From NCBI GenBank assembly GCA_002269645.1, contig NIVC01000056.1, forward strand, positions 1,054,001 to 1,118,000: 64,000 bases of DNA. Reading direction: 5' to 3'. Position numbers and translations under genes: made by a program. Below the pieces are notes generated by a model. It had not been told where the DNA came from. It ran no database searches and saw only the letters and a list, made by a program, of their open reading frames with translations. Every line of letters begins with the position of its first letter. The stretch's first letter is position 1. The stretch comes from Macrostomum lignano. Taxonomy: Eukaryota. Below are positions 4,654 to 53,690 of the stretch, in pieces.

Positions 4654-5155
4654 TACTCAAGCCATTCCCACGATTCACTACGATTGTACGCCCTTCTGTA
4701 TGTTCGGGCCTGCTCGATGTTCATGTATGCACTGAGAGAGTAAAAAGTTGAGTTCAGTATATTTTGGGAAACATCGAAGTCAGGTATTTTCAAGTTTTCT
4801 CGATAACCAAAAAACGGAGCTGGACGATGCTAATTTCAAAGATTCACTGGTGTCAAAACCACAACAGGTTCTGCCGTGTGTTTTCGTCGAGCGAGACAAT
4901 GAAAATAAAATACCCGAGCTGGTTTGACCTCTAAAAAAATAAGGCTGCTAATTTTAGCCGTTTCTTAGACCAGTAAATACACGATTTTCTTTTCTGTTAT
5001 TGTCATGTTTTTACCATCTGAAGCCTCTCTGTTCCTCGGTTGAACCAAACAAGTTGTTGATAGAAACGATTTAGCTGGTAAATATTATTCAAGAACAATG
5101 CAAAACTGAGCAGGGATGAGTTTAGGCTGCAAAACATCAAAATACAGGACGGCTC

Positions 5156-5163
5156 TATAAATA
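5156..5163 (+). promoter_or_regulatory. Candidate TATA box of the vWA gene
   Basis: TATAAATA about 125 nt upstream of the ATG at 5288. Supported by motif and position only. Confidence 0.45.
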
Positions 5164-5287
5164 CGAGAGCTGCACAGCTAGAAATGACCGCTCTATAAGC
5201 CGACTTGAAGCTGCTGCATAAGCATTAAGTAGTTTGCTTCAATTAAGCTCCAAGCCCTTGACACTACTAGCGCTCGAGTTGCTAGAC

Positions 5288-8200
5288 ATGAAGGCATACG
5301 AGACTCTGCTGCTCCCGCTAGCAGCCGTTCTACTCGTCGGAGTGTCTGGTCGTGTTGGTGAGTTTTGACATCTGTTTATCAGCGCTCACTTTTCCTAGGT
5401 TCTACCATAGCTCTGTTTAAGAATGTTTAAAAATGCGCAACATTTCCAAACCTACAGTCCTGGTAGATCCTGTTTGCAAAGACTGCCCGTCGAAGAACTG
5501 CACCTACGACGAGAAGTTGAGATGCTCCTGCGTCGGGTTGAATCGCACAATCGAGATTGTCAATCCCGGAGATCGCGAATACGCTAACGTATCGCTGGGA
5601 TTCGCCATCGACCGAAGCGGAAGCATGCGAACCGAAATCTCCTCCGTGAAGTCAAGCATCCAGGCTGTTGTCAGTGAGTGCTGTATTTTCAATTTGCTTT
5701 TTTATTTAGCCATAGCTAAGAGCTGGTGAATCAGGTGGCGAATCTTCGATTGAAATCTTCAGCAGAACTCTAACCAAACTGGTTTGCCTTCATTGGTTTA
5801 AGCAATTCTAAGACAGACACAAATAAACAAATTATGAACTTATTATTTATTAATTGCAGCCGCCACATCCGGAATTTTCGACAAGTACGTGATCGGCACG
5901 TTCAGCGATCCATACACATCACATGTCGTCGAATCCGATGATGTGGCGACCATCAACACGTTCGTCAGCGGCATCTCCGCCTCCGCTGGCGGCGACTGTC
6001 CGGAAATGGCGCTTCAGGGCATCCGTGAAGTGGCCCAGCGAGTTAGCGAAGGCTCCGTAATCTTTGTCTTTACCGATGCCAGCTCCAAAGACCTGCACCT
6101 GGAGTCCAGCGTGCAAGATTTGCTGCTGTCGAAGAACATAAGGCTGAATGTCATGGCCACTGGATCACTGTGCGGTAAAGGCGAGGAGTTCACCAGACTG
6201 ACGGACGCCACTAGTGGCACAATTTACAAAACGCCCAACAAAGCTGATGTTGATTACGTCATGAACTATATTAAGAATTTTGCCAAGTACGGAATCCGCT
6301 TCATCCGAGGCATGCCAACCACTCTGATTGATCTGAAGGAGATCGCCAACGGAAGTAAGTACCTGCGCTGAAGCTTTATAGGCTCGATAGGCTGCTCATA
6401 AATTATTTAATATGCACATTCTCACTTGTCTCCCTTTTTCAGCCTGCTCGTGCCGGTCCATTGTGGAGAACCTCGTCTGCATTCCACCAGACGAAGATGA
6501 GTGCCCGTGCCCCGAAGGCTACGAGAGAGTTGAAGTGAGAAAGAAAGTCTGTCGACTGTGCCGGCCGCCGCCGCCGCCGCCGCCACCGCGGCCGAAGTTC
6601 GGCTCTCTTGGCTTCGTAATTGATCACTCCGGATCGATGGGCAGCGAGATCAGCGCAGTTAAGGCGAGCATCAAAGCCATTCTCGCTGCCAACAAGCTGT
6701 TCAAAGACTACGTAATCGGCAAGTTCAATGATCCCTACAAGAAAAGTGTGATCCGATCCAGCAACAAAGGCACCATCGTCAGCTTCTTGAACGCGATCAC
6801 TGCCACGGGTGGAGCGGACTGTCCCGAGTACTCGATGTCGGGCCTGCGGGACGCCGTGAAACTCGCCAAGAAGAGGTCGGTCATCATTATGTTTACCGAC
6901 GCGTCGGCCAAGGATGCCGGTATGAAGAATATGGTAGCCTCGCTATTCAAAGCCAAAAAATCCAGGCTGTTTGTTGTTGCGACCGGCAACCTTTGTGGAC
7001 GACGGTACTCCAAAGAGTACCACTATGTGGCTAAGGAGTCGGGCGGTGCCGTCATATCCTTGTCTAGCAAGTCGTTTGTGTCTGATGTGAGTTATTAATT
7101 TTTTGTCCAAAAATTTGCTTTTTTCTTTGTGAAGATTAAAAACTATTCAGAAAGAAACCTACCTAAAATTATTCAAGGTTTTGTCCTTCATCAAGAAGGC
7201 TGCCGCTGGAGACGTGTCTTTCGACGAGTTCCCCAAAGATGAGCACGAACTAACGACTCCGAAACCAATACGTAAGTTGTGCTTCAAGATTGCTAGCATT
7301 TTCCATTGTTTTGAATATCCTTTTTCGTACCTGAAATAACAATGAGATCGTTTTTTCCATATTACAGACTGCTGCAGCATCACTGTAGTACGACGGTGTA
7401 AAAAGGTGAAACGTAAGTCAATTCTTTGATAGAATTTATTGCCACTTTAGCAAGGCATGTCATTTCTTCTAGTGCGAACACCATCGCAAACCGAATTGTT
7501 TCAGTGCCCTGCCCACCCGGCTATAGTCGAGTGGTGATGCGGCAGAAAGTGTGTCCGATGCTACCGCAGTGCCCGGTGAGACGGGCCGGCTCCTTAGGCT
7601 TCATCATCGATGACAGCGGCTCGATGGGAGCGGAGATTTTCGCCGTCAAATCGCAAATCACCAGCATCATCAGCAAAAACGTGCGCTTTTTTGACTACGT
7701 TATGGGCAGATTCGGCGACCCCTACGTGAAAAACGTGATCCGATCAGCTGATGAGTCGGAGATCCTGGACTTCCTGGGCGACATCACCCCTTCAGGCGGA
7801 GCCGATTGTCCAGAGTTCGCCATGTCGGCGCTCGAGGATGCCGCTATGCTGGCTCGAGATTACTCGATTTTCATCCTCTTCACTGACGCCGCCGCCAAGG
7901 ACTCCCACAAGCTGTTGTCAGTAGCCGCTCTTTTGAATTCGAAGAACATCAAACTGTTCGTGGTTGCTACTGGGACTCTGTGCGGTCCGAAAGTCTATTC
8001 CGAAGAATTTCACGACCTGGCCAGTCGGACAGGCGGCGCTGTGATGACGTTAACAGCCAAGACGTCCATCAGCGAGGTTGGCACTACTTTTATCACTTCG
8101 TGCTAAACCAGATCCAATAAGACATTCCATTAGTAACTATTTGATACTTAACATTTTTCAGGTTCTCGAATTTATCGGCATGGCCGCTTCAGGGGAAGCA

Positions 8201-8883
8201 TCGTTCCATCACTTTCCGGAGTCTTTGTCCGAACTGAGAAAGTTGAAATGTAAGCCTTTTTGACACCTATATATTATAGTTATCTAGTTATATCTAGTTT
8301 AGCTCTTCGATCATTACTCTGCTCGAATAGACACGCTAGAAATACGAGCTATAAATGATTGCCTTAGTGATTTGTTTTGGTGTATATACGAACCGTATAC
8401 CTCATGTCTTTTATAGGCAAGAAGTGCTGGGTACAGGAGGTCTCGACCTGCTGTTGCCACGGCATCGGCGATGGCTGCCACTTCCATCACGGACACCATC
8501 ACCATCACCCTCACCATCATCACGACCACGGCCACGGCTGCGGCTGCGGCCACGGACACGGCCATGGCTACGGCTACGGACACGGACACGGCCACGGCTG
8601 CGGCTGCGGCCACGGCCACGGCTACGGCTACGGCCACGGCTATGGCTACGGCCACGGACACGGCCACGGCCACGGCTGCGGCTGCGGCCACCACCACGGC
8701 CACGGCCACGGCCACGACCACGGCCACGGCCACGGCCACGGCCACGGCCACGGCCACGGCCACGGCCACGGCCACGGCCACGGCCACGGCCACGGCCACG
8801 GCTACGAACACGGCCACGGCTACGAACACGAACACGGCTACGAACACGATCACCATGGCCCGCCTTACCCTTACAAAGGCTAA
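5288..8883 (+). CDS. Secreted protein (~893 aa): signal peptide, three hemicentin/VWA7-type vWA domains with Cys-rich linkers, and a C-terminal His/Gly(Tyr,Cys)-rich tail
   Basis: Exons 5288-5357, 5467(or 5458)-5673, 5860-6354, 6443-7086, 7178-7271, 7368-7412, 7505-8076, 8162-8249, 8417-8883. All introns are GT-AG, all phases are compatible, and the total is 2682 nt. Signal peptide MKAYETLLLPLAAVLLVGVSG. MIDAS motifs DRSGS, DHSGS and DDSGS are each followed by GG(A)DCPE and F/MFTDA, as in the hemicentin-1 N-terminal vWA domain. The last exon encodes ...CCCHGIGDGCHFHHGHHHHHPHHHHDHGHGCGCGHGHGHGYGYG...(HG)n...YEHDHHGPPYPYKG*. Confidence 0.9.
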
Positions 8884-9236
8884 AACAGTTTTGCTAAAGA
8901 AATCATTGTATGACTTACGCTGCTCGCGACTGAAGCCTATCGAACATCAACGTACTCGTAATTAATTAATGTAAATTTTACAATTAATGAGTCCATACCA
9001 AAAATTGTCACGACGAAATGACAGCGCTTGACACAAGCCAAGTATTTTTATTTTCTAACTATTAGTGCATCGACCATACTTTCTTTGCTTTGGCAAAAAA
9101 ATATCAACATGTTTTCACATTGCCTGGGCCAAGACCTGTTGAAACTTTGTGTGTAAATAAACAGCTGCGCCTCGACTGTTTATCGTACTTATTGAAACAC
9201 CAATAAGAAACCGAATTAGCTTGCTACTTTCTATTT

Positions 9237-9394
<158 letters not shown>

Positions 9395-9892
9395 GTCTGT
9401 AAGTATGTATCCCAGATCAGCATTGGGTAAAGAATAAGTGTTCCAAGCTACACACTGACAGAATAGTGGCTCAATTGTATGACAAGTCGAATTGTTTGTC
9501 ACTTATTATTTACAAGTGACATCCTATATTTGATGAGGATCCAAAATGCACCAACATCAAAACCAAAGACAGTAAAAAATCTGCTAGACCAAGTATTCTT
9601 CTATGAAAAAATTGGCGTTGCGTTTGAAAAAGAATTTGATTCATTGCGCTTTTCCATGTTTCAATATATTATGAAGAATAAGTTAGTTCGTTCAAATAAA
9701 ATCATAAATTATAAAATTCTGTACCTTCAACTGCATGCTTTAGCAAAATAAGTTTCAATAAAACAATGTGATTGTTTTGAAGTTTCTGAGCACATTCAGC
9801 ATTTCTGGTTATTGAAGTTAATGCCCTGTGCGATTTTCTATATTATTTTTTGAAAATTTTGAGAATGTTGCGTGCCATATTTTAGAATATAT

Positions 9893-10300
9893 GAAGCCAA
9901 TCAAAGCCACTGCCACAGAACTACACTCGGCCATAGACAATAAAGCCAATCAAAGTCACAGCCACAGAACTGCACTCGGCCATAGACAATAAAGCCAATC
10001 AAAGTCACAGCCACAGAACTACACTCGGCCATAGACAATAAAGCCAATCAAAGCCACAGCCACAGAACTGCACTCGGCCATAGACAATAAAGCCAATCAA
10101 AGCCACAGCCACAGAACTGCACTCGGCCATAGACAATCAAGCCAATCAAAGCCACAGCCACAGAACTGCACTCGGCCATAGACAATAAAGCCAATCAAAG
10201 CCACACTGCCACAGAACTGCACTCGGCCATAGACAATCAAGCCAATCAAAGCCACACTGCCACAGAACTGCACTCGGCCATAGACAATATAGCCAACCAA
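9893..10300. repeat. ~49-bp minisatellite
   Basis: About 8 tandem copies of AAAGCCAATCAAAGCCACAGCCACAGAACTGCACTCGGCCATAGACAAT. Confidence 0.95.
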
Positions 10301-10829: not shown

Positions 10830-11925
10830 AAAATATTCCCAAGACAGCAAGCATCCCCCCCAGATAGCAAGCACCCCCCTCCAAAAGTAAGCAACCGCAA
10901 ATAGCAAGCATCCCCTAATACTCGTAGCAAGCATCCACCCAGATAGCAAGCATCACCCCAGATAGCAAGCATCCTGCAGATAGAAGCATCCACCCAGATA
11001 GGCTGAGATAGCAAGCATCCTGCAGATAGCAAGCATCCACCCAGATAGGCTGAGATAGCAAGCATCCTGCAGATAGAAGCATCCACCCAGATAGGCTGAG
11101 ATAGCAAGCATCCTGCAGATAGCAAGCATCACCCCAGATAGCAAGCATCCTGCAGATAGAAGCATCCACCCAGATAGGCTGAGATAGCAAGCATCCTGCA
11201 GATAGCAAGCATCCACCCAGATAGGCTGAGATAGCAAGCATCCTGCAGATAGCAAGCATCCACCCAGATAGCAAGCATCCTGCAGATAGCAAGCATCCCC
11301 TAATACTCGTAGCAAGCATCTACCCAGATAGCAAGCATCACCCCAGATAGCAAGCATCCTGCAGATAGCAAGCATCCTGCAGATAGCAAGCACCCCCCTC
11401 CAAAAGTAAGCAACCGCAAATAGCAAGCATCCCCTAATACTCGTAGCAAGCATCTACCCAGATAGCAAGCATCACCCCAGATAGCAAGCATCCTGCAGAT
11501 AGAAGCATCCACCCAGATAGGCTGAGATAGCAAGCATCCTGCAGATAGCAAGCATCACCCCAGATAGGCTGAGATAGCAAGCATCCTGCAGATAGCAAGC
11601 ATCACCCCAGATAGCAAGCATCCTGCAGATAGAAGCATCCACCCAGATAGGCTGAGATAGCAAGCATCCTGCAGATAGCAAGCATCCACCCAGATAGGCT
11701 GAGATAGCAAGCATCCTGCAGATAGCAAGCATCCACCCAGATAGCAAGCATCCTGCAGATAGCAAGCATCCCCTAATACTCGTAGCAAGCATCTACCCAG
11801 ATAGCAAGCATCCCCTAATACTCGTAGCAAGCATCTACCCAGATAGCAAGCATCACCCCAGATAGCAAGCATCCTGCAGATAGCAAGCATCCTGCAGATA
11901 GCAAGCATCCCCCAGATAGAAGCAT
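10830..11925. repeat. Complex minisatellite built on GATAGCAAGCATC modules
   Basis: Mixed units such as GATAGCAAGCATCCTGCA, GATAGCAAGCATCCACCCA and GATAGGCTGA with higher-order recurrence. Confidence 0.95.
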
Positions 11926-13134
11926 CAATAAAACATACAAACCTTAGAGATTTAGTATATTTAGATAATTCACAAAAAATTTATCAGTTGACAAATTTTC
12001 AATTGGAATTTTGAAATTAAAGAAGCAGTTGAACTGAGTATATTTGTCACAACATTAGTAACTTCAAAATTACAAGAGAAATACAGTATCTGTTACAAGG
12101 GAATCAGCTTGAAACTCTGTGCCCAGCTTGTGGGTTAAAAAAATTGTAAGTTATACTATAATTTTACTTGGGGTGCTTAAATTCACAGATTCGACCTTTT
12201 AAAAGGACAAGCAGCAAACATCAATTAGGTCAATTAATCAAAGTATTGAATTTCATTTACACTCGTAGACCTATTCACAGATACGAAGAGTCAAGGACTA
12301 CCTTGCGAAGAGTAAATACGAGTAGACATGCCACTCGCAATGATAGTTGTGAAAAAACGTCTACTCTTTTTCAGTAGTTTGTCTGCGCATTGTCACTTGA
12401 ATTCAATGTGGCAGCTACAATTTGCTTTCCTTCCTCTCAGTTATGGGGTTAAGAATGAACAACAAGCATTTATTTAGACGTACACAAGTGAACGTAAGAC
12501 GGATGAAACTCAGCCTAGGGGGGGCAGGCCCAATCTAGCTCAGCCAATCAGAGAGAAGTAAGGAGAGAGGGTTAAAGTCAGACGGACGAAATTCAGCCTA
12601 GGACAGCCCCAATCTAGCTCAGCCAATGGGAGAGCAGTAAGGAGAGAGGCAAATTCAGACACAAGCGGGCAAGAGGAAAGCCAAACTGTTTATTGGTTTG
12701 GCAGGGGGGCTAAGGGCGCCACCCCTTTTCTCGCAATGCTATACACACGCACGTACTGGGTTTGAATTCTTAAGTTTTATGGCAATCTTCAAAGTTAGCT
12801 AAATTTAATTTTTTATTTAATTTTGAGCCTGAAACAGTCTGTACATGTAATCGATAAAACATGATGAAGATGTTAATGTAATGGGGCTGCTTGCAGAAAG
12901 CCACTAGGCGATTGTTCCAGGTTCAAAAACATTTTTGGTGCCTTTCCAAATTTATTGGGTTTTTTAATAGTACGAGCTGTGAAGCCAAAAAACGCTAATT
13001 TTGCTACTGAAAAGAGTAGATACAGGATTTTTTGCAAGCAGCAGATTTAGCTATTAGTGTATCTGTAGCCTTGTTACGGTATTATAAAATTACTATCAAA
13101 TTTTTCTTACACTTTCTCAATCCACCCCACCAGC

Positions 13135-14539
<1,405 letters not shown>

Positions 14540-14880: not shown

Positions 14881-15539
14881 ATCTCAGTTTTTCTCACAAA
14901 AATTATAATTTAAAACTCCCGGGAAAGCACTTTTGAAAACGTATTAGAACTTCAGAGCTCCAAAAGAGTGAGAACATTTTTGTAAAACAAGGTTGAAACA
15001 TCTACAAGTTTACAAGGAAAAACACAGATTTAGCGGGGGAAAATTCCACGCTGATGGAAACGAGAGCCGGAGAGGAAGAGGGGGAGTGGGGAGACTAAGT
15101 GAGAAGTCGCAGCCGCCCCACTTCAGTCCCTGATGGAGAGAGCTGCCTCTTAAAGAGTTTGAAATATCGGTCACTTCACCTGGACGAGAGTGGCTCCCCA
15201 ATAATGCGGTCCCCAGCTACCCCTGCCTCACTTCAAACGGGTCGTACTTCTGAATCCATTTTGTCTCCCTAAGCTCGCAGGCCCAGGAAATCTCTCTTGC
15301 TGTCTGTCTCTCTCTGACAGGAAGGCTTCTCTATAAAACTCGATTTACATTATTTTAATGTTCAGCGATTACTTATACGCCAGATTAGAGCATTACCGTA
15401 GTACTGTGTGCGTGTAAACGATCGTTTAAACTTTTCTGGTAAATTATTCTATTCTACAATTAAATAATAAGCAAATCGAATATGAACGCCGCCTGATTTA
15501 CAGCTCAGATTCAGCTTGAGACTCCGTGTTCTTATCAGC

Positions 15540-15970
15540 CCCACTGCCCTCAACTCCCACTGCCCTCAACCCCCACTGCCCCTCAAGCCCCCCCCCAACC
15601 CCGACTGCCCCTTAACCCCCACTGCCCTCAACCCCCTGCCCCTCAACTCCCACTGCCCTCAACCCCCACAGCCCCTCAACCCCCACAGCCATCAACCCCC
15701 ACTGCCCCTCAACCCCCACAGCCATCAACCCCACTGCCCTCAACCCAGCCCTCAACCCCCACTGCCCCTCAACCCCTACTGCCCCTCAACCCAGCCCTCA
15801 ACCCCACTGCCCCTCAACCCCTACTGCCCCTCAACCCAGCCCTCAACCCCCACTGCCCCTCAACCCCCACTGCCCCTCAACCCCCACTGCCCCTCAAGCC
15901 ACACTGCCCCTCAACCCCACTGCCCTCAACCCCCACTGCCCCCAACCCCCCACTTCCCCTCAACCCCACT
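15540..15970. repeat. C-rich minisatellite (CCCCACTGCCCTCAA-like)
   Basis: Tandem degenerate ~15-17 bp units. Confidence 0.92.
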
Positions 15971-17084: not shown

Positions 17085-17700
17085 TAACAGGTTAATACTG
17101 CTCTATAACCGGTAGTGTCCCTATCTAACAGGTGAATACTGCTCTATAACCGGTAGTGTCCCTATCTAACAGGTGAATACTGCTCTATAACCGGTAGTGT
17201 CCCTATCTAACAGGTGAATACTGCTCTATAACCGGTAGTGTCCCTATCTAACAGGTGAATACTGCTCTATAACCGGTAGTGTCCCTATCTAACAGATGAA
17301 TACTGCTCTATAACCGGTAGTGTCCCTATCTAACAGGTGAATACTGATCTATAACCGGTAGTGTCCCTATCTAACAGGTAAATACTGCTCTATAACCGGT
17401 AGTGTCCCTATCTAACAGGTGAATACTGCTCTATAACAGGTAGAGTTCCTATCTAACAGGTGAATACTGCTCTATAACAGGTAGTGTTCCTATCTAACAG
17501 GTAAATACTGCTCTATAACAGGTAGTGTTCCTATCTAACAGGTAAATACTGCTCTATAACCGGTAGTGTTCCTATCTAACAGGTAAATACTGATCTATAA
17601 CCGGTATTGTCTCTATCTAGCAGGTAAAACATCAATGTATAACAACAGGTGACAGCCTCATCTAACAGGTAAAACAGTACTGTATAACAACGGGTGAATG
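17085..17700. repeat. 41-bp minisatellite
   Basis: Tandem AACAGGTGAATACTGCTCTATAACCGGTAGTGTCCCTATCT, degenerating toward the right end. Confidence 0.95.
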
Positions 17701-18158
17701 GCCCATCTAACTCCCACAGATGTATTTCCTCCAAGTTCATCAAGTTAATTGCACTCGTCAATGTTAAAGTTAACTGCCCAAGAAATTCTTGATTCCTACT
17801 TGATTCCTACTTGATTCCATGAAGTATTTGCATAGATGAAGCTTTAACTCAGCTCAAAGCCTAAAGCCTAAAACTACTGAGCACAAATTAATGATATATA
17901 TCAGGCGGTCGGCAGACCACCCAGATAACTACAGGAGCGGCGAATACGTATCCTAGGAGGCTGAATACATTCTCGTGCACGCACGGAGCTGCACAGAGAT
18001 GAGGAAGACACTCGATACTTATCTCACTTCAGTCTCCGACTTGTCTCTAGGGGGGGGGGGGGCTGGAGGAAAAGGATCTAGGATAGGGAGGAAAGGTTGA
18101 GGCTCCTTTGGCTTCAAAGGCAATTCGAAACTAAAATAGCGAAATAGCTGGAGAGATG

Positions 18159-24125: not shown

Positions 24126-24540
24126 CTTGCCCACTTGATGGGTCGATTTTATTGGACGAATTCTATGAGACTCGTGATTCAAATAACTTTTATTTTTCTC
24201 TTTTTAGATTCCTAATCACGAAAGCTATCATATTTACTGAATATATATTTTTTTCTGAAGTGCCTCTGGTGTTAAAGCTTTATTTCACCTTCTGTGATAT
24301 TTTCTCGACCTACTTGGCACAACTTTACAAATTCGAATACAATTAATTCGCTTCTGAGCAATTCTTCAGAAAGAAAAAATGGTTTTTCGTTAACATCGAG
24401 ACAAATAAACTGTTTCTTTTACTGTCAATTTGTTTTGCTATATCTTAAAATGCATGCACAATCTTGCGAACATATCTTCGTGTCGGTGCAGCACAATCGC
24501 AAAATCGTAGGCCTGCTCTATAAGGCTGAAAGAACTGTTC

Positions 24541-26408
<1,868 letters not shown>

Positions 26409-26576: not shown

Positions 26577-29500
26577 CTACACCGAGTTCTTGCTGGTCAT
26601 CAAGTAGGGCCGCTCCTGAATAACAAAATTTGTAGTGAAAAACGTTGCTTCAGTAGATTTTAATAAGTAGCAAGGAACAGATATTTAAAGCTTAAATTAG
26701 GATTACCTGAGTTGGACAGGAGAAGCTACCAGCAGGATCCCAGTTGGTGGTCTTCTGGCCCACTGGTTCCAGCTGAAGTTTTGGTTTGGTTTTTGTTTCC
26801 GTTAGAATTTAATTTATTCAGTTAGACTTTGACACCGGTTACACCATCAATATCACAGTTACAGCATCAATATCACAGATTACAGCATCAATATCACAGA
26901 TTACAGCATCAATATCACAGTTACAGCATCAATATCACAGATTACAGCATCAATATCACAGATTACAGCATCAATATCACAGATTACAGCATCAATATCA
27001 CAGATTACAGCATCAATATCACAGATTACAGCATCAATATCACAGATTACAGCATCAATATCACAGATTACAGCATCAATATCACAGATTACAGCATCAA
27101 TATCACAGATTACAGCATCAATATCACAGTCGATTACAGCATCAATATTACAGATTACAGCATCAATATCACAGATTACAGCATCAATATTACAGATTAC
27201 AGCATCAATATCACAGTCGATTACAGCATCAATATGACAGATTACAGCATCAATATCACAGTCGATTACAGCATCAATATCACAGATTACAGCATCAATA
27301 TCACAGATTACAGCATCAATATGACAGATTACAGCATCAATATCACAGTCGATTACAGCATCAATATCACAGATTACAGCATCAATATCACAGATTGCAG
27401 CATCAATATCACAGATCACAGCATCAATATCACAGATTACAGCATCAATATCACAGATTACAGCATCAGTATCACAGATTACAGCATCAATATCACAGAT
27501 TACAGCATCAATATCACAGATTACAGCATCAATATCACAGATTACAGCATCAATATCACAGTCGATTACAGCATCAATATGACAGATTACAGCATCAATA
27601 TCACAGTCGATTACAGCATCAATATGACAGATTACAGCATCAATATCACAGTCGATTACAGCATCAATATCACAGATTACAGCATCAATATCACAGATTA
27701 CAGCATCAATATCACAGATTACAGCATCAATATCACAGATTACAGCATCAATATCACAGTCGATTACAGCATCAATATCACAGATTACAGCATCAATATC
27801 ACAGATTACAGCATCAATATCACAGTCGATTACAGCATCAATATTACAGATTACAGCATCAATATCACAGATTACAGCATCAATATTACAGATTACAGCA
27901 TCAATATCACAGTCGATTACAGCATCAATATGACAGATTACAGCATCAATATCACAGTCGATTACAGCATCAATATCACAGATTACAGCATCAATAACAC
28001 AGATTACAGCATCAATATCACAGATTACAGCATCAATATCACAGATTACAGCATCAATATCACAGATTAGAGCATCAATACCACAGATTGCAGCATCAGT
28101 ATCACAGATTGCAGCATCAATATCACAGATTGCAGCATCGATATCACAGTCGATTACAGCATCAATATCACAGATTACAGCATCAGTATCACAGATTACA
28201 GCATCAATATCACAGTCGATTACAGCATCAATATCACAGTCGATTACAGCATCAATATCACAGTCGATTACAGCATCAATATCACAGATTATAGCATCGA
28301 TATCACAGTCGATTACAGCATCAATATTACAGTCGATTACAGCATCAATATCACAGTCGATTACAGTATCAATATCACAGATTACAGCATCAATATCACA
28401 GATTGCAGCATCAATATCACAGATTACAGCATCAATATCACAGATTACAGCATCAATATCACAGATTACAGCATCAATATCACAGTCGATTACAGCATCA
28501 ATATTACAGATTACAGCATCAATATCACAGATTACAGCATCAATATTACAGATTACAGCATCAATATCACAGTCGATTACAGCATCAATATGACAGATTA
28601 CAGCATCAATATCACAGTCGATTACAGCATCAATATCACAGATTACAGCATCAATATCACAGATTACAGCATCAATATCACAGATTACAGCATCAATATC
28701 ACAGTCGATTACAGCATCAATATCACAGATTACAGCATCAATATCACAGATTGCAGCATCAATATCACAGATCACAGCATCAATATCACAGATTACAGCA
28801 TCAATATCACAGTCGATTGATGCTGTAATCAATATTAATATTACAGATTAATATTACAGATCAAGATCAGTATTACAGATTACAGCATCAATATCACAGA
28901 TTACAGCATCAATATCACAGTCGATTACAGCATCAATATTACAGATTACAGCATCAATATCACAGATTAGAGCATCAATACCACAGATTGCAGCATCAGT
29001 AACACAGATTGCAGCATTAATATCACAGATTACAGCATCAATATCACAGATTACAGCATCAATATCACAGATTACAGCATCAATATCACAGATTACAGCA
29101 TCAATATTACAGATTACAGCATCAATATCACAGATTAGAGCATCAATACTACAGATTGCAGCATCAGTATCACAGATTGCAGCATCAATATCACAGATTA
29201 CAGCATCAATATCACAGATTACAGCATCAATATCACAGATTACAGCATCAATATCACAGATTACAGCATCAATTTCACAGATTACAGCATCAATATCACA
29301 GATTACAGCATCAATATCACAGATTGCAGCATCAATATCACAGATTGCAGCATCATATCACAGATTACAGCATCAATATCACAGATTACAGCATCAATAT
29401 CACAGATTACAGCATCAATATCACAGATTACAGCATCAATATCACAGATTGCAGCATCAATATCACAGATTGCAGCATCAATATCACAGATTACAGCATC

Positions 29501-32500
29501 AATATCACAGATTACAGCATCAATATCACAGATTACAGCATCAATATCACAATCGATTACAGCATCAATATCACAGATTACAGCATCAATATCACAGTCG
29601 ATTACAGCATCAATATCACAGTCGATTACAGCATCAATATCACAGATTACAGCATCAATATCACAGTCGATTACAGCATCAATATGACAGATTACAGCAT
29701 CAATATCACAGTCGATTACAGCATCAATATCACAGATTACAGCATCAATAACACAGATTACAGCATCAATATCACAGATTACAGCATCAATATCACAGAT
29801 TACAGCATCAATATCACAGATTAGAGCATCAATACCACAGATTGCAGCATCAGTATCACAGATTGCAGCATCAATATCACAGATTGCAGCATCGATATCA
29901 CAGTCGATTACAGCATCAATATCACAGATTACAGCATCAGTATCACAGATTACAGCATCAATATCACAGTCGATTACAGCATCAATATCACAGTCGATTA
30001 CAGCATCAATATCACAGTCGATTACAGCATCAATATCACAGATTATAGCATCGATATCACAGTCGATTACAGCATCAATATTACAGTCGATTACAGCATC
30101 AATATCACAGTCGATTACAGTATCAATATCACAGATTACAGCATCAATATCACAGATTGCAGCATCAATATCACAGATTACAGCATCAATATCACAGATT
30201 ACAGCATCAATATCACAGATTACAGCATCAATATCACAGTCGATTACAGCATCAATATTACAGATTACAGCATCAATATCACAGATTACAGCATCAATAT
30301 TACAGATTACAGCATCAATATCACAGTCGATTACAGCATCAATATGACAGATTACAGCATCAATATCACAGTCGATTACAGCATCAATATCACAGATTAC
30401 AGCATCAATATCACAGATTACAGCATCAATATCACAGATTACAGCATCAATATCACAGTCGATTACAGCATCAATATCACAGATTACAGCATCAATATCA
30501 CAGATTGCAGCATCAATATCACAGATCACAGCATCAATATCACAGATTACAGCATCAATATCACAGATTACAGCATCAATATCATAGGTTACAGCATCAA
30601 TATCACAGATTACAGCATCAATATCACAGTCGATTACAGCATCAATATCACAGATTACAGCATCAATATCACAGATTACAGTATCAATGCCGCAGATTAC
30701 AGCACCAAAACCGCAGACTACGTCACCTTGCATTAAAAGGGCTGCATTCAGTGTTGCTCATCATCTCACCATATTGTTCCACAGTCCTTTGCCTGCGGCG
30801 CTGTGACCCCGCACACCAAAGTGGAAACAGTCTGGCGCAAAGAAGTCGAAGTCGATTTCTCCGTTGATCCTTGGCGGCTGGCTGTCGCGCAGGAACGGCT
30901 GGTTCACCACAGTGAAGTCGTCGCGGGTGTCGTAACGACGAGAGTCAATCAGCTCGTTGAGCAGCCGCTGATAGTCCTTCTGCAGGTTGGCGATCTCTTG
31001 CTCCTAGTAGATTTGTTTGATTGAATTTGAGGTGAAGGTGCTCAAAGCTTCATTTTAGTTCTGGATTTTGAGGAGTTATGAGCTCATACGATAATTCACA
31101 AGCACATGCAGTTTCTAGCTGTCAAGTTACGAGTTTGGAAACGATACCTGTTCCTCGCTCTCAGGAAAAGCTGGACACTTGCAGAGCATTGAACCCAGCA
31201 GCACAGAGCAGGTGGGGCTGCCGTCCTTTAGCTCCTTCACTAGAGTGACATCCAAAACTTCGACAACGTTGACAAAGGCTCGAGGCACATTATCGTGCAG
31301 ATAGTCTAGCGCGTTGCGAATATGCCGGATGTAGTTCTCGGGGCTGAAAATTTCCTAGAAAATGATCAACCAGTTAAAAAGATTTTGCTATTACGTTGTT
31401 AGTGTTCCACAACCGAGTTTCGACCAGTGTAAATCGTCTTGTTGTCTTTTCAACAAACCTTATCCTTGCAGTAGTCACAGATGTCGTTTCCGCCAACGAA
31501 TATAGTTATCAACTTCCAATCGTTGTTAAAGTCCACTTTAGAGTCGGATTTTAACTTTCTGACCAACGACTCGGCTTGGCTTGGCATATCGCTGAAATTC
31601 AGACATCAGATCAGACATCGTCACACAACCAGCGCTGGGGTAATTCTGCCCATTCCGCTGACTCCTGAGTACATACAAGCGCGCCAATACTGTGTGCAGG
31701 TGCGCGCTCATGCACACGCTCACACAGGGTGTACAGCTGCTCTTTGGCTTTCTAATCGTCAGGAATGTACACCCAGCCAGTTTTGATGTACAAGTCTCAA
31801 ATTAATGTAACTAACAGGTGAGCACTGTAACTAACAGGTGAGCACTGTAACTAACGGGTGAGCACTGTAACTAACGGGTGAGCACTGTAACTAACAGGTG
31901 AGCACTGTAACTAACAGGTGAGCACTGTAACTAACAGGTGAGCACTGTAACTAACAGGTGAGCACTGTAACTAACAGGTGAGCACTGTAACTAACAGGTG
32001 AGCACTGTAACTAACAGGTGAGCACTGTAACTAACGGGTGAGCACTGTAACTAACAGGTGAGCACTGTAACTAACAGGTGAGCACTGTAACTAACAGGTG
32101 AGCACTGTAACTAACAGGTGAGCACTGTAACTAACAGGTGAGCACTGTAACTAACAGGTGAGCACTGTAACTAACAGGTGAGCACTGTAACTAACAGGTG
32201 AGCACTGTAACTAACAGGTGAGCACTGTAACTAACAGGTGAGCACTGTAACTAACAGGTGAGCACTGTAACTAACAGGTGAGCACTGTAACTAACAGGTG
32301 AGCACTGTAACTAACAGGTGAGCACTGTAACTATCAGGTGAGCATCATAACAAACAAGTGAGCACAGCGTCCCAAACAACCCCAAACAAAATCCCAGCAG
32401 CAGCTCACGAAGCAAGTTTTCCCGGCTCAGCAACGTTCAGCCTGGCAACCGAAGAAATCACATTCCCGTTGCCAGTCGAATAACCATAAAGATTTGTCTG

Positions 32501-40873: not shown

Positions 40874-43068
40874 ATGACCGCCGGCAAGACAGCGATAGAC
40901 ATCTCGCTCGAGGCTCTGACCGAAGTTGATGAACGCCAGAAACTACCGCCGCCGCCGAGGGACACACTTCGCCTGGTGTACATCGCATTTTTGCTTCACG
41001 GTGTGGGCATTCTGCTACCCTGGAATCTATTCATCAATGCCAAGGAGTACTTTGAGAACTACAAGCTCAACACGAACATCTCGCGCGAGGCGGACTACAG
41101 GCACAACTTTATGAACTACATCGGCCTCGGGTCTCAGCTGCCCAACATGCTCATGCTGGCTTGCAACGTCTTCTTTCAGCCGTTGACGACCAGCGAAGGA
41201 CAGGAAAAAACTGCCAGCAAAAATGCCGCACGTCGCATTATGCTAGTGATCCTGATCGAAGTTTGCATCTGCGCTACCACCGTCATCATGGCCTTGGTGG
41301 ACACGAGCGAATGCCCGCGATTGTTCTTCGATGTCACGCTAATCAGTGTCATTGTGCTCAACTGTTGCACCGGCGTCTATCAGTCCTCAGCGTTCGGCAT
41401 GGCGGGTGTGCTGCCCATGACCTACTCCAGTGCGATCGTACTGGGTAAGGCGTCTATCGTCATGCTCCTCGTGCGTGTCGTAGGAATCAGGGGCGTCGCC
41501 ATCCATGGCCAGACCCCACGGTGACAGGGAGATATTAGTTTATTAGCTAGTCACAGAAAAGCTTTACATAAATGCGCTGCTACTAAAAAGACCAAAGTCT
41601 TCAGTGGACTAGTACGTCTAGTAGTCTTTGCCATTATTTCCTGAGCACACAAACGCGACACCGCTCACACAGGATGCACGAATACTAGCACTGACTTTTT
41701 ATCGCTAGGCATCTCCAGGCATTCAATTAATGGGGTCCTGCGCAGAACCAATCCACTAATCCAAATCTCCGAGTATCTCTCAGGAGCCGGCACAGATATG
41801 GGGTGACGGAGACCCACAAATTTAGCAAACTTTTGCTCATCACTTTCCCCAGCAAGCTTAAATATGCCACTTAAAATTCAAGTAACTTTATTGTGGTTCA
41901 CACCGCCGCTGTACCAAACCACTTCGAAAAGTATTTATACAGTTATAAACATGTTCAATTTAAGGTACCTAATTTCACTTGAAGTACTGAAGCATTTTAA
42001 CGTCGTTTTACGCAACACAGGTAACAACATCTGCGGAACAGTTGTTGCCATTGTGAACATTGTTAGTCGGCTGGCATCCTCGCAGAATCTGCAAATGACC
42101 GCTGTTGGCTATTTCTCATTCTCTGTCGTATTGCTACTCATCTGCTTCTCCTCGCTCCTCATATTGCCGAAGCTGCCGTTCTATCGGCACTACCAGCAGC
42201 CGCCGTCGCAACCGCATTCGTCTGAGAGGACCTGCGACACAACGCAAGGCGGCGCTAAGAACCGACTGCTCAATGAGCAGACGTCTTTCGAATCGGACGA
42301 CTCAACTGAAACTGTAAAGGGATGCTGCGATGAGAATCTGGAAACTGTCAGGGCTTGCTGTGCTTTGTGCTGTATCCGCAAGGGACCTGTGGCTGCGTGC
42401 TCCAGGTGAGCCGGCCAATTTTTTTAAGAGTTGCCGATTTCCAAGCCAATTGAATTTCGGTAAAAAAGCTGTGTTTCGTCAAAGTTGAATTCATAACTTT
42501 GAACCACAATTTCAGGTACTGGCAGAGATACCTGGCTGCCTTCAAAGAGTGCTGGGTTCACTGCCTCAGCGTCTGGTCGACATTCTTCTGCACTTTGGCC
42601 TGCTTTCCAGCCGTTCAATCGGCCATTCGTCCGGTCCAGCTGCTGTCCATAGAGGCCTGGTTCACCGACATCTTCGTGTTCCTCGGCTTCAACCTGTTCG
42701 CCATGCTGGGCAGTCTGGCGTCAAATTTTGTACAATTCCCAAAACCACGCTGGCTGGCACTGGTCGTGTGGATTCGTACCCTAATCTTCATACCGTTCTT
42801 CATCATGTGCAACTGTTTCCCGGACAACCGGGCCCCGGCATTCCCGGTGGTCATCGCTAATGACTACGTGTTCGCGGCTGGCATGGTGTTGTTCGCTTTC
42901 ACCGGCGGCTACTTCAGCGCCCTCTGCATGATGTACGCGCCAAGGGACGTGAAGAATCCAAAGCACGCGGCATTGGCTGGCATGGTGTCGTCATTCTTCC
43001 TGGTCTCCGGCATCTTCTGCGGAGTGGCCTTCGGTGGAGTGCTGTTCAATGTGGTGCAGGCGCATTAG
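40874..43068 (+). CDS. SLC29A: Equilibrative nucleoside transporter (SLC29/ENT), ~502 aa
   Basis: Exons 40874-41444, 42021-42405 and 42516-43068 total 1509 nt and are phase-consistent. Motifs: LVYIAFLLHGVGILLPWNLFINAKEYF, GVYQSSAFGMAGVLPMTYSSAIVLGNNICGT, FFCTLACFP, FNLFAMLGS, RTLIFIPFFIMCN, FAFTGGYFSALCMMYAP. The symbol is family-level only. Confidence 0.96.

Positions 43069-45249: not shown

Positions 45250-53690
<8,441 letters not shown>

What the first reader, a model, noticed from the sequence alone, without database searches (positions are those of the whole stretch)
5288..8883. Secreted triple-vWA protein with a (His-Gly)n tail: candidate metal-crosslinked structural or adhesive matrix protein
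Seen in sequence: a clean 9-exon model encodes a signal peptide, three tandem hemicentin-type vWA domains with intact DxSGS MIDAS motifs, Cys-rich linkers (one with a poly-Pro run) and a ~150-aa C-terminal tail dominated by His and Gly. Established knowledge: hemicentin carries a single such vWA followed by Ig repeats. His/Gly-rich proteins harden invertebrate biomaterials through Zn/Cu coordination (Nereis jaw Nvjp-1, Glycera jaw protein, squid beak His-rich proteins, mussel preCol termini), and Gly/Tyr/His-rich proteins occur in flatworm eggshells. Inference: this fusion could be a modular scaffold in which the vWA domains bind matrix partners and the tail cures by metal or Tyr/Cys cross-linking, for example in an eggshell, copulatory stylet, rhabdite or glue. 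I do not recognise this architecture as a named protein.
Basis: partly seen in the sequence, partly recalled or inferred. Interest (0 to 1): 0.8.

Follow-up and report, generated by a model that had tools for sequence, protein, structure and literature searches.

The report
Secreted flatworm triple-vWA protein, His-Gly tail
This is a real, intact Macrostomum lignano gene for a secreted protein with three binding (vWA) domains and an unannotated tail of about 136 residues made mostly of histidine and glycine. Its relatives occur in the material the worm leaves on surfaces, so it is a good but untested candidate for a pH- or metal-curing biomaterial protein.

Summary
Nine GT..AG exons (5288-8883, + strand) give an open 2691-nt CDS of 896 aa. 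It encodes a signal peptide, three VWA_4 (hemicentin/VWA7-type) domains (Pfam E 2.4e-100), Cys-rich linkers, a Pro8 run, and a tail. The tail is 40% His, 37.5% Gly, 8% Tyr and 5% Cys, encoded by an in-frame (CACGGC)n array.

The organism is Macrostomum lignano. UniProt holds only uncharacterised 678-aa fragments (99% identical). They cross every junction from exon 3 to exon 9 but stop 33 residues into exon 9. No protein recovered in my searches contains the His-Gly tail.

The gene belongs to a tandem-VWA_4 family that my searches found almost only in M. lignano. The closest paralog (60% identical, colinear, no tail) and a basic two-domain paralog were detected by mass spectrometry in worm footprints (Wunderer et al. 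2019, Dataset S2). Peptides specific to this gene were not found in the stored parts of those datasets.

The tail's composition matches the Nereis and Glycera jaw proteins. Its calculated charge goes from +44 at pH 5 to -7 at pH 8.1.

The function (a pH/metal/quinone-curing matrix protein) is inference only; no expression data were found. The main rival is a young, neutral coding-microsatellite expansion, since at least 33% of this window is tandem repeat.

Verdict: a new variant of known kinds, of moderate interest.

The parts
5156..5161 (+). TATAAA box, 132 nt upstream of the start codon. An in-frame stop lies between it and the ATG.
   Evidence: pattern scan and translation of the upstream region; consensus match only
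5288..5357 (+). Exon 1: start codon and signal peptide (aa 1-21 = 5288-5350)
   Evidence: colinear with the N-terminus of paralog P0004
5458..5673 (+). Exon 2: N-terminal Cys-rich module (5475-5531) and start of vWA1, with DRSGS at 5610-5624
5860..6354 (+). Exon 3: remainder of vWA1 (the domain spans 5592-6323)
   Evidence: P0002 begins exactly at this exon boundary
6443..7086 (+). Exon 4: Cys-rich linker 1 (6445-6561), Pro8 run (6565-6588), and most of vWA2 with DHSGS at 6622-6636
7178..7271 (+). Exon 5: last helix of vWA2 and an acidic spacer
   Evidence: junctions confirmed by P0002
7368..7412 (+). Exon 6: first half of Cys-rich linker 2 (HCCSITVVRRCKKVK)
   Evidence: P0002; conserved in P0004
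7505..8076 (+). Exon 7: second half of linker 2 and most of vWA3, with DDSGS at 7609-7623. The donor is GTTGGC.
   Evidence: junction confirmed by P0002
8162..8249 (+). Exon 8: last helix of vWA3 and a spacer
   Evidence: P0002
8417..8883 (+). Exon 9: C-terminal Cys motif CKKCWVQEVSTCCC, the His/Gly tail, and stop TAA at 8881-8883
   Evidence: P0002 covers its first 33 codons. The Cys motif is conserved in P0004.
8473..8880 (+). His/Gly/Tyr/Cys tail, aa 761-896. In order: a poly-His stretch (8479-8523), CGCG / YGYG / (HG)n blocks, (HG)14, YEH repeats, and the end ...GPPYPYKG.
8521..8842 (+). (CACGGC)n hexanucleotide array that encodes the tail. The perfect 14-unit core lies at 8719-8802.
9156..9161 (+). 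AATAAA, a candidate polyadenylation signal 273 nt after the stop codon
   Evidence: consensus match only

Best explanation
Window 5288-8883 (+) is an intact Macrostomum lignano gene for an 896-aa secreted protein.

**Architecture.** It has a signal peptide and three VWA_4 domains. Each domain carries a DxSGS...GG(x)D...TD metal site and one conserved Cys pair, and each is preceded by a small Cys-rich module. A 136-aa His/Gly/Tyr/Cys tail sits at the C-terminus.

**Family.** The gene belongs to a family of secreted tandem-VWA_4 proteins that my searches found almost only in M. lignano. Other members of that family are deposited outside the animal, in footprints.

**Proposed mechanism.** The vWA domains act as metal-ion-dependent protein-binding or multimerising modules of an extracellular material. 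The tail acts as a switchable condensing and cross-linking module. At the acidic pH of a secretory granule the tail is strongly cationic (calculated +35 to +44) and should stay soluble. At seawater pH it becomes uncharged to slightly negative. The imidazoles are then free to coordinate Zn, Cu or Ni between chains, or to be attacked by DOPA-quinones. The YGY motifs and CGCG pairs could add covalent cross-links.

**Shown here:** gene structure, domains, predicted secretion, family membership, and extracellular deposition of paralogs.

**Inferred:** that the tail is translated in full, what the tail does, what the vWA domains bind, and in which structure the protein sits. My preferred candidates are the eggshell or shell/cement secretions and surface secretions. 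The stylet is the least likely.
For: - Gene model and open frame. Junctions from exon 3 to exon 9 are confirmed by independent UniProt models.
- Three VWA_4 domains, E 2.4e-100. The vWA fold is seen in the AlphaFold2 model, with cores at about pLDDT 80.
- Foldseek top hits are mussel byssus PTMP1 (two tandem vWA domains, Zn in the MIDAS; E 1e-13) and collagen VI, followed by integrin I domains.
- Signal peptide present and no TM segment.
- The gene is colinear with paralog P0004 at 60% identity, with the Cys framework and metal-site residues conserved. This argues for purifying selection.
- P0004 peptides (10 and 13 peptides in two experiments) and P0007 peptides (7) occur in footprint mass spectrometry. 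P0007 and P0027 occur in the PNA pull-down, and P0027 in tails (PMC6410801 Datasets S1-S3).
- Tail composition is H 39.7 / G 37.5 / Y 8.1 / C 5.1%. For comparison, Nvjp-1 is His 27 / Gly 36 / Tyr 7.3% with [GH]n and GYGHG motifs, and shows Zn- and pH-triggered assembly. Glycera MTP is Gly 49 / His 40% and shows Cu-triggered phase separation. Squid beak proteins have GHGxY repeats (PMC9999432).
- Calculated tail charge runs from +44 at pH 5 to -7 at pH 8.1.
- His is a known nucleophile in flatworm eggshell quinone tanning, and Tyr-X-Tyr motifs are cross-linking sites (PMC11727788).
- The proximal His-rich stretch mixes CAT and CAC codons. The repeat shows no indels over 322 nt, and its variants are confined to C, Y, D and E.
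Against: - There is no transcript or peptide evidence for codons beyond the first 33 of exon 9.
- Twelve peptides specific to this gene are absent from the stored (truncated) footprint, tail and pull-down tables.
- No expression or localisation data were found in any paper or supplement searched.
- The closest paralog manages without any tail, and has no CACGGC within 10 kb downstream.
- The perfect (CACGGC)14 core shows very recent slippage. At least 32.6% of the window is tandem repeat, so a neutral expansion is credible.
- No tail-bearing orthologue was found, so conservation of the tail is untested.
Confidence: 0.45

Rival explanations
1. The gene is real, but the His-Gly tail is a young, essentially neutral coding-microsatellite expansion at the 3' end of the CDS. 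On this view the protein does whatever its tail-less paralog does, as a component of surface secretions or footprints, and the tail is dispensable and probably length-polymorphic.
For: - Perfect (CACGGC)14 core.
- At least 32.6% of the window is tandem repeat, including a 21-mer array that creates artefactual ORFs over 600 aa long.
- Paralog P0004 ends six residues after the shared Cys motif and has no such repeat downstream.
- No homologous tail was found anywhere.
- All three frames are open through the repeat.
Against: - The array is in frame, has no indels, and ends in a non-repeat coding end (GPPYPYKG, stop).
- The older proximal part has diversified only to Cys, Tyr, Asp and Glu, in ordered blocks (CGCG three times, YGYG three times, YEH three times).
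- His-richness begins in a non-hexamer CAT/CAC stretch.
- The resulting composition coincides with proven functional His/Gly materials.
Confidence: 0.3
2. The tail serves metal handling or defence rather than mechanics. It could be an extracellular Zn/Cu/Ni buffer or sequestration domain. Alternatively it could be the precursor of Gly/His-rich antimicrobial peptides released by cleavage near the KK site at aa 743-744.
For: - About 54 His in 136 residues, plus three CGCG pairs.
- The (HX)n motif is a classic metal-binding motif in ZIP and CDF transporters, and Gly/His-rich antimicrobial peptides exist (shepherins, holotricin). Both points are from my own knowledge and were not checked here.
- The protein is predicted to be secreted.
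Against: - No processing evidence exists.
- Three large vWA domains are not needed for a buffer or for an AMP precursor.
- Family members are found in deposited material rather than in body fluids.
Confidence: 0.1
3. The tail is not part of the mature product. The true transcript would end or splice elsewhere within exon 9, or the repeat length and frame in this assembly would be an artefact. The protein would then be a plain triple-vWA paralog.
For: - Existing database models stop at HFHHGHHHHHHR, or lose the frame there (P0002; P0006 reads 'HFHHGTTITIT').
- No annotated protein with the tail is present in 5.8 billion clusters.
Against: - P0002 reads into the His-rich region in the same frame.
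- No stop codon occurs before 8881, and no alternative terminal exon is evident.
- The truncated models are typical of repeat-collapsed draft assemblies.
- An AATAAA lies 273 nt after the predicted stop.
Confidence: 0.1

Closest known systems
M. lignano paralog BOX15_Mlig027525g6 (P0004; the UniProt 'VWFA domain-containing protein' group)
   Same: 60% identity, colinear over 757 aa. It has the same signal peptide position, the same three VWA_4 domains, the same Cys-rich linkers and the same C-terminal CWxExSTCxC motif. It is a real, externally deposited protein, seen as 10-13 peptides in footprint mass spectrometry.
   Different: It ends six residues after the Cys motif. It has no His/Gly tail, no Pro8 run, and DxTGS instead of DxSGS. 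It has fewer and shorter introns.
Nereis jaw protein Nvjp-1, Glycera jaw multi-tasking protein (MTP) and squid histidine-rich beak proteins
   Same: They are secreted. They have a similar Gly+His-dominated composition with Tyr, and the same [GH]n and GYGHG-type motifs. Their known behaviour is pH- and Zn/Cu-triggered condensation and hardening (PMC9999432). These properties are compared with the tail only.
   Different: Those proteins are low-complexity throughout (30-40 kDa) and have no globular domains. Here a 14-kDa tail hangs on an 80-kDa triple-vWA body. The tail contains Cys pairs and a long perfect (HG)14, whereas MTP has no long runs. No sequence homology is detectable. No metal or tissue data exist for this protein.
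Mussel byssus proximal thread matrix protein 1 (PTMP1; PDB 4CN8/4CN9/4CNB) and collagen VI
   Same: They are secreted matrix proteins built of tandem vWA domains. PTMP1 is the best Foldseek match (E 1e-13), and one of its entries has Zn in the MIDAS. In the byssus, vWA proteins work alongside His-rich preCol termini.
   Different: Only 13-14% identity, and the vWA subfamily differs. The rank partly reflects the tandem arrangement rather than specific kinship. There is no sequence-level hit to any PDB chain. PTMP1 has no His-rich tail.
Hemicentin-1 and VWA7
   Same: They share the VWA_4 (PF25106) type of vWA domain, including GGxDxPE in place of the MIDAS Thr.
   Different: Hemicentin has one vWA domain followed by Ig, TSP1, EGF and fibulin modules. 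VWA7-like proteins carry VWA7_N, GBD_Hemicentin and Ig_VWA7. None of these modules is present here. Hits outside Macrostomum cover only about 20% of the query, at E about 1e-20.
M. lignano adhesive proteins Mlig-ap1 and Mlig-ap2
   Same: Same animal. They are secreted and found in the same footprint datasets. Mlig-ap1 relies on a highly cationic low-complexity region for cohesion, which is conceptually like a protonated His tail (PMC6410801).
   Different: ap1 and ap2 are 5,407 and 14,794 aa long, with vWD/C8/TIL, EGF, lectin and TSP1 domains and K/R-rich repeats. They have no VWA_4 domains and no His/Gly region. This gene is not one of them.
Flatworm eggshell precursor proteins (trematode vitelline proteins)
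   Same: They are secreted Tyr-rich proteins cured by quinone tanning, with DOPA-Lys/His adducts or metal-catechol bridges. C-terminal Cys/Tyr-rich extensions with Tyr-X-Tyr motifs occur in them (PMC11727788).
   Different: This gene has no TES domain, and those proteins have no vWA domains. No ovary or oocyte expression evidence was found for this gene.

Membership tests
VWA_4 domain family (Pfam PF25106, hemicentin/VWA7-type vWA) | Score above the curated Pfam cut-off | tested here: met
   333.5 bits against a cut-off of 27, E 2.4e-100, three stretches
VWA_4 domain family (Pfam PF25106, hemicentin/VWA7-type vWA) | Metal-site residues: DxSxS, an acidic residue or Thr in the GG-x loop, and TD on strand beta4 | tested here: met
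   DRSGS, DHSGS and DDSGS are present. An invariant D in GG(x)DCPE aligns with the T of ITIH4 'GGT'. FTDA is invariant. This is a sequence-level test; metal binding itself was not tested.
VWA_4 domain family (Pfam PF25106, hemicentin/VWA7-type vWA) | vWA alpha/beta fold | tested here: met
   The AlphaFold2 model of the 99%-identical P0002 has alternating strand and helix, with cores at about pLDDT 80. Foldseek matches vWA and integrin I domains with TM (target) 0.6-0.65. The linkers have low confidence.
Hemicentin (fibulin-6) orthologue | A single N-terminal vWA domain followed by Ig arrays, TSP1, nidogen G2F, EGF and a fibulin module | tested here: not met
   Pfam finds only vWA families in the 896 aa
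VWA7-like proteins | VWA7_N (PF25107), GBD_Hemicentin (PF23560) and Ig_VWA7 (PF23619) around one VWA_4 domain | tested here: not met
   These modules are present in the outside hits P0009-P0022 and P0032, but absent here
M. lignano secreted tandem-VWA_4 family (P0004, P0007, P0023-P0027, the N-terminus of P0024, P0168) | Signal peptide, at least two VWA_4 domains, and CPxGY..V...KVC-type Cys linkers | tested here: met
   60% colinear identity to P0004. E-values of 1e-98 to 1e-133 to the others. Cys residues and motifs are invariant.
M. lignano secreted tandem-VWA_4 family (P0004, P0007, P0023-P0027, the N-terminus of P0024, P0168) | Protein detected outside the animal (in footprints) | tested here: inconclusive
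   The paralogs are detected. Twelve peptides specific to this gene were not found in the stored tables, which are truncated.
His/Gly-rich metal- or pH-cured biomaterial proteins (Nvjp-1, Glycera MTP, squid HBPs) | Secreted, with Gly+His as the dominant residues and GH/GYGHG-type repeats | tested here: met
   This holds for the tail only: H 39.7%, G 37.5%, Y 8.1%, against the values in PMC9999432.
His/Gly-rich metal- or pH-cured biomaterial proteins (Nvjp-1, Glycera MTP, squid HBPs) | The whole protein is low-complexity and is the bulk matrix of a hardened, metal-loaded tissue | tested here: not met
   85% of the mature protein is globular vWA plus linkers. The tissue and metal content cannot be tested here.
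His/Gly-rich metal- or pH-cured biomaterial proteins (Nvjp-1, Glycera MTP, squid HBPs) | Binds Zn/Cu and condenses on a rise in pH or on metal addition | not testable with these tools
   Only a calculated charge switch is available: +44 at pH 5 to -7 at pH 8.1
Mlig-ap1 / Mlig-ap2 adhesive proteins | vWD-C8-TIL, EGF or TSP1 arrays, K/R-rich or 221-255-aa repeats, and adhesive-gland expression | tested here: not met
   Domain description from PMC6410801, compared with the Pfam result

The most novel reading that the evidence does not exclude
This would be the first platyhelminth example of a His/Gly-rich, metal- or pH-cured structural protein, and an architecture not seen before. It would be a single polypeptide that joins MIDAS-type vWA binding modules (as in byssal PTMP1 or collagen VI) to an Nvjp-1/MTP-like curing tail. 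Within its family, the usual fixed K/R cationic charge would be replaced by a pH-switchable His charge. M. lignano has RNAi and transgenesis, so it would offer a genetically tractable model for how His-rich materials are stored, triggered and hardened.
Probability: 0.25. Interest if true: 0.75.

Novelty: new variant of a known kind. Interest (0 to 1): 0.5.

Why it matters
His/Gly-rich curing proteins have so far been studied in worms' jaws, squid beaks and byssus, animals in which genetics is impractical. If this tail really works that way, M. lignano would allow direct in vivo tests of storage, triggering and metal loading, because it has RNAi, transgenesis and a transparent body.

It would also show how a new material property can arise by microsatellite expansion at the end of an existing binding protein.

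More immediately, the full-length product is missing from current annotations. It is therefore also missing from the proteomics search databases used for this animal.

Tried and rejected
1. I used the 99%-identical P0002 instead.
2. **Homologue searches.** Three searches (full protein, protein without tail, tail plus C-terminus) found no tail-bearing protein. The tail search gave only weak low-complexity hits.
3. **PDB sequence searches.** Neither the single sequence nor a domain profile gave any significant hit.
4. **Literature.** Searches combining Macrostomum with von Willebrand, histidine-rich, hemicentin, stylet, eggshell, tyrosinase or single-cell turned up nothing on this gene.
5. **Supplements.** Arbore 2015, Weber 2018, Wudarski 2017 and Grudniewska 2018 hold no entry for this family. 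Lengerer 2018 (Dev Biol), the tail in situ screen, is not held.
6. **RNA815_13.** This shell/cement-gland transcript, with collagen VI/VII-type vWA domains, was considered. I rejected it because its top hits (collagen VII, 1e-114) indicate classical VWA, not VWA_4.
7. **Mlig-ap1/ap2 identity.** Rejected on domain content.
8. **Neighbouring ORFs.** The large ORFs at 26.9-30.7 kb, checked as possible genes, are artefacts of a 21-bp satellite.
9. **Genomic clustering.** There is no second family member in the window.


Full report
**1. What is in the sequence**

I read 4800-9400 and assembled the exons by hand. Nine exons on the + strand are joined by GT..AG introns: 5288-5357, 5458-5673, 5860-6354, 6443-7086, 7178-7271, 7368-7412, 7505-8076, 8162-8249 and 8417-8883. 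They give a 2691-nt open frame of 896 codons ending in TAA at 8881-8883. Eight of the nine donors are GTGAGT or GTAAG-type; exon 7 has GTTGGC.

Signals around the gene fit a transcription unit of about 3 kb:
- A TATAAA box lies at 5156, 132 nt upstream of the ATG.
- An in-frame stop precedes the ATG.
- An AATAAA lies at 9156, 273 nt after the stop codon.

These are consensus matches only.

**2. Independent support for the model**

The organism is Macrostomum lignano. UniProt A0A1I8I2M0 and A0A1I8I0P7 (P0002/P0169) are 678 aa and 99% identical to this protein. They begin exactly at the exon 3 boundary and read across every junction from exon 3 to exon 9. They end 33 residues into exon 9, at ...CKKCWVQEVSTCCCHGIGDGCHFHHGHHHHHHR. 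A third model, P0006, is the same gene with frame errors.

Exons 1-2 are colinear with the N-terminus of the paralog P0004.

No protein among the 5.8 billion clusters searched carries the rest of the tail. The full-length product is therefore unannotated. The part beyond about 8520 rests on continuity of the frame rather than on transcript evidence.

**3. Domains**

- Pfam finds three VWA_4 (PF25106) stretches with E 2.4e-100, and nothing else of note.
- Each domain has DxSGS, GG(x)DCPE and FTDA, plus one conserved Cys pair 58 residues apart.
- Alignment to ITIH4 shows that the usual MIDAS Thr ('GGT') is an invariant Asp here. This is a family-typical variant site.
- Each domain is preceded by a small Cys-rich module (C.C...C...CP.GY.RV...KVC). 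Linker 1 also carries Pro8.
- The only hydrophobic segment is the N-terminal signal peptide.
- An AlphaFold2 model of P0002 has mean pLDDT 69.5, with vWA cores near 80 and linkers below 50. It has the vWA fold.
- Foldseek ranks mussel byssus PTMP1 first (two tandem vWA domains; E 1e-13; 13-14% identity). Collagen VI and integrin I domains follow. The ranking partly reflects the tandem arrangement.
- No PDB chain matches by sequence.

**4. The tail**

Residues 761-896 are 39.7% His, 37.5% Gly, 8.1% Tyr and 5.1% Cys. The order of elements is as follows:
- a poly-His stretch written in mixed CAT/CAC codons;
- three CGCG pairs alternating with YGYG and (HG)n blocks;
- a perfect (HG)14;
- three YEH units;
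- a non-repeat end, GPPYPYKG.

At the DNA level the tail is (CACGGC)x53.7 at 8521-8842, with 84% matches and no indels. The perfect 14-unit core lies at 8719-8802.

The frame is set by the motif CW[VI]xE[VI]STCxC, which is shared with the paralog. All three forward frames are open through the repeat, so openness alone is not evidence.

The calculated net charge of the tail is +44 at pH 5, +35 at pH 5.5 and -7 at pH 8.1.

**5. Family and context**

An exhaustive HMMER search with P0002 found 11 proteins at E<1e-30. Most are from M. lignano; two are unnamed Logan/ENA fragments and one is a hagfish protein. The M. lignano relatives are:

| Protein | Description |
|---|---|
| P0004 (BOX15_Mlig027525g6) | Triple-vWA paralog without tail |
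| P0007, P0023, P0025, P0027 | Very basic two-domain proteins, pI above 11 |
| P0024 (BOX15_Mlig022224g1) | 4112-aa protein: two VWA_4 domains, a vWD domain and K/R/C-rich repeats |
| P0033/P0168 | SUEL-lectin plus VWA_4 plus K/R-rich region |

Weaker hits, such as scallop 'hemicentin-1' and VWA7-like proteins, match one domain at a time and carry VWA7_N, GBD or Ig modules that are absent here. The VWA7-like group matches at about E 1e-20.

P0004 ends six residues after the shared Cys motif, and 10 kb downstream of it holds no CACGGC repeat. The window contains no second family member.

**6. Evidence from the literature**

No paper names this gene. The mass-spectrometry tables of Wunderer et al. 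2019 (PMC6410801) do contain the family:
- **Dataset S2 (worm footprints).** A 2949-nt transcript annotated 'similar to hemicentin' has 10 peptides in one experiment and 13 in another. All belong to P0004. One of them, SSIQAVVTATSGIFDK, is shared with this gene.
- **P0007** is in footprints (7 peptides) and in the PNA pull-down.
- **P0027-type peptides** are in the pull-down and in tails.

The same footprint tables contain tubulins and a mucin-like protein, so they sample general surface secretions and debris, not only glue.

Twelve tryptic peptides specific to this gene are absent from the stored parts of all three tables, which were cut when stored. The tail has no internal K or R, so it would be invisible to trypsin.

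Mlig-ap1 and Mlig-ap2 are different proteins. RNA815_13, a shell/cement-gland vWA transcript, is of collagen VI/VII type and not of this family.

**7. How it most likely works**

Family-level evidence points to a secreted component of an extracellular material.

The tail's composition and motifs match Nvjp-1 (His 27, Gly 36, Tyr 7.3%; [GH]n and GYGHG motifs; pH- and Zn-triggered assembly), Glycera MTP (Gly 49, His 40%; Cu-triggered phase separation) and the squid GHGxY proteins (PMC9999432).

I therefore propose a storage-and-curing switch:
- In acidic granules the tail is cationic and soluble.
- At seawater pH it becomes neutral and able to bind metal or react with quinones.
- The vWA domains tie the protein to partners.

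Flatworm eggshells are cured by DOPA-quinone attack on Lys and His, and Tyr-X-Tyr motifs can cross-link (PMC11727788). An eggshell or shell-gland role is therefore as plausible as an adhesive or mucus role.

Within the family, His may be a switchable replacement for the fixed K/R charge of the basic paralogs. All of this section is inference.

**8. Rivals**

The strongest rival is a neutral, recent coding-microsatellite expansion. It is supported by the perfect (CACGGC)14 core, the tail-less paralog, the lack of any orthologous tail, and a window that is at least 32.6% tandem repeat. One 21-bp satellite in the window even generates 643-aa pseudo-ORFs.

Against it stand four points:
- the array is in frame and free of indels;
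- it has ordered Cys/Tyr/acidic variants;
- a non-hexamer His stretch lies at its start;
- it ends in a proper coding end.

Lesser rivals are a metal-buffer or antimicrobial role, and a transcript that does not include the tail.

**9. Verdict**

It combines two known kinds, tandem-vWA matrix proteins and His/Gly curing sequences, in a way I could not find elsewhere.

The functional reading is reasonable but untested. The neutral-repeat alternative is live. Interest is moderate (0.5), and the step from here to a decisive test is short: RNA-seq mapping and a re-search of PXD012626.

Noticed in passing
window 9240-9400, 9894-10300, 10838-11926, 13492-13848, 15539-15967, 17085-17711, 24539-26407, 26839-30708, 49404-53228, 57224-59090 and others: The window is extremely rich in tandem repeats, which cover at least 32.6% of the 64 kb. 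Examples are (TCTG)x467, a 21-mer x179, a 25-mer x152 and a 34/35-mer x53. This matters for judging the coding (CACGGC)n array.
   Followed up: partly
window 26901-28832 (-) and 29303-30733 (-): The longest ORFs in the window (643 and 476 aa) are artefacts of the 21-bp satellite. They translate as 'CDIDAVI' repeats, and their Baculo_PEP_C Pfam hits are spurious.
   Followed up: yes
window 40874-41524 (+): This ORF has a sub-threshold match to Nucleoside_tran (PF01733; 27.1 bits against a cut-off of 29.8). It is probably an exon of an ENT-type nucleoside transporter gene. The gene model was not built.
   Followed up: no
P0024 (BOX15_Mlig022224g1, PAA86075.1), not in the window: This is a 4112-aa M. 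lignano protein with a signal peptide, two VWA_4 domains 43% identical to this gene, a vWD domain, and thousands of residues of K/R/C-rich repeats (pI 10.2). It resembles the cohesive glue protein Mlig-ap1 in style but is a different gene. I could not find a description of it.
   Followed up: partly
PMC6410801 Datasets S1-S3 (supplementary files 2-4): Several tandem-VWA_4 family members are present in the footprint, pull-down and tail proteomes but are not discussed in the paper. They are the P0004, P0007 and P0027 types, plus RNA1310_3126.1 (1242 aa, pI 11.75) and RNA1310_17919 (584 aa, pI 10.5).
   Followed up: partly
window 6565-6588: A Pro8 run (CCG/CCA codons) lies in linker 1. It is an insertion relative to the paralog, and so a second low-complexity gain in this gene copy.
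   Followed up: no
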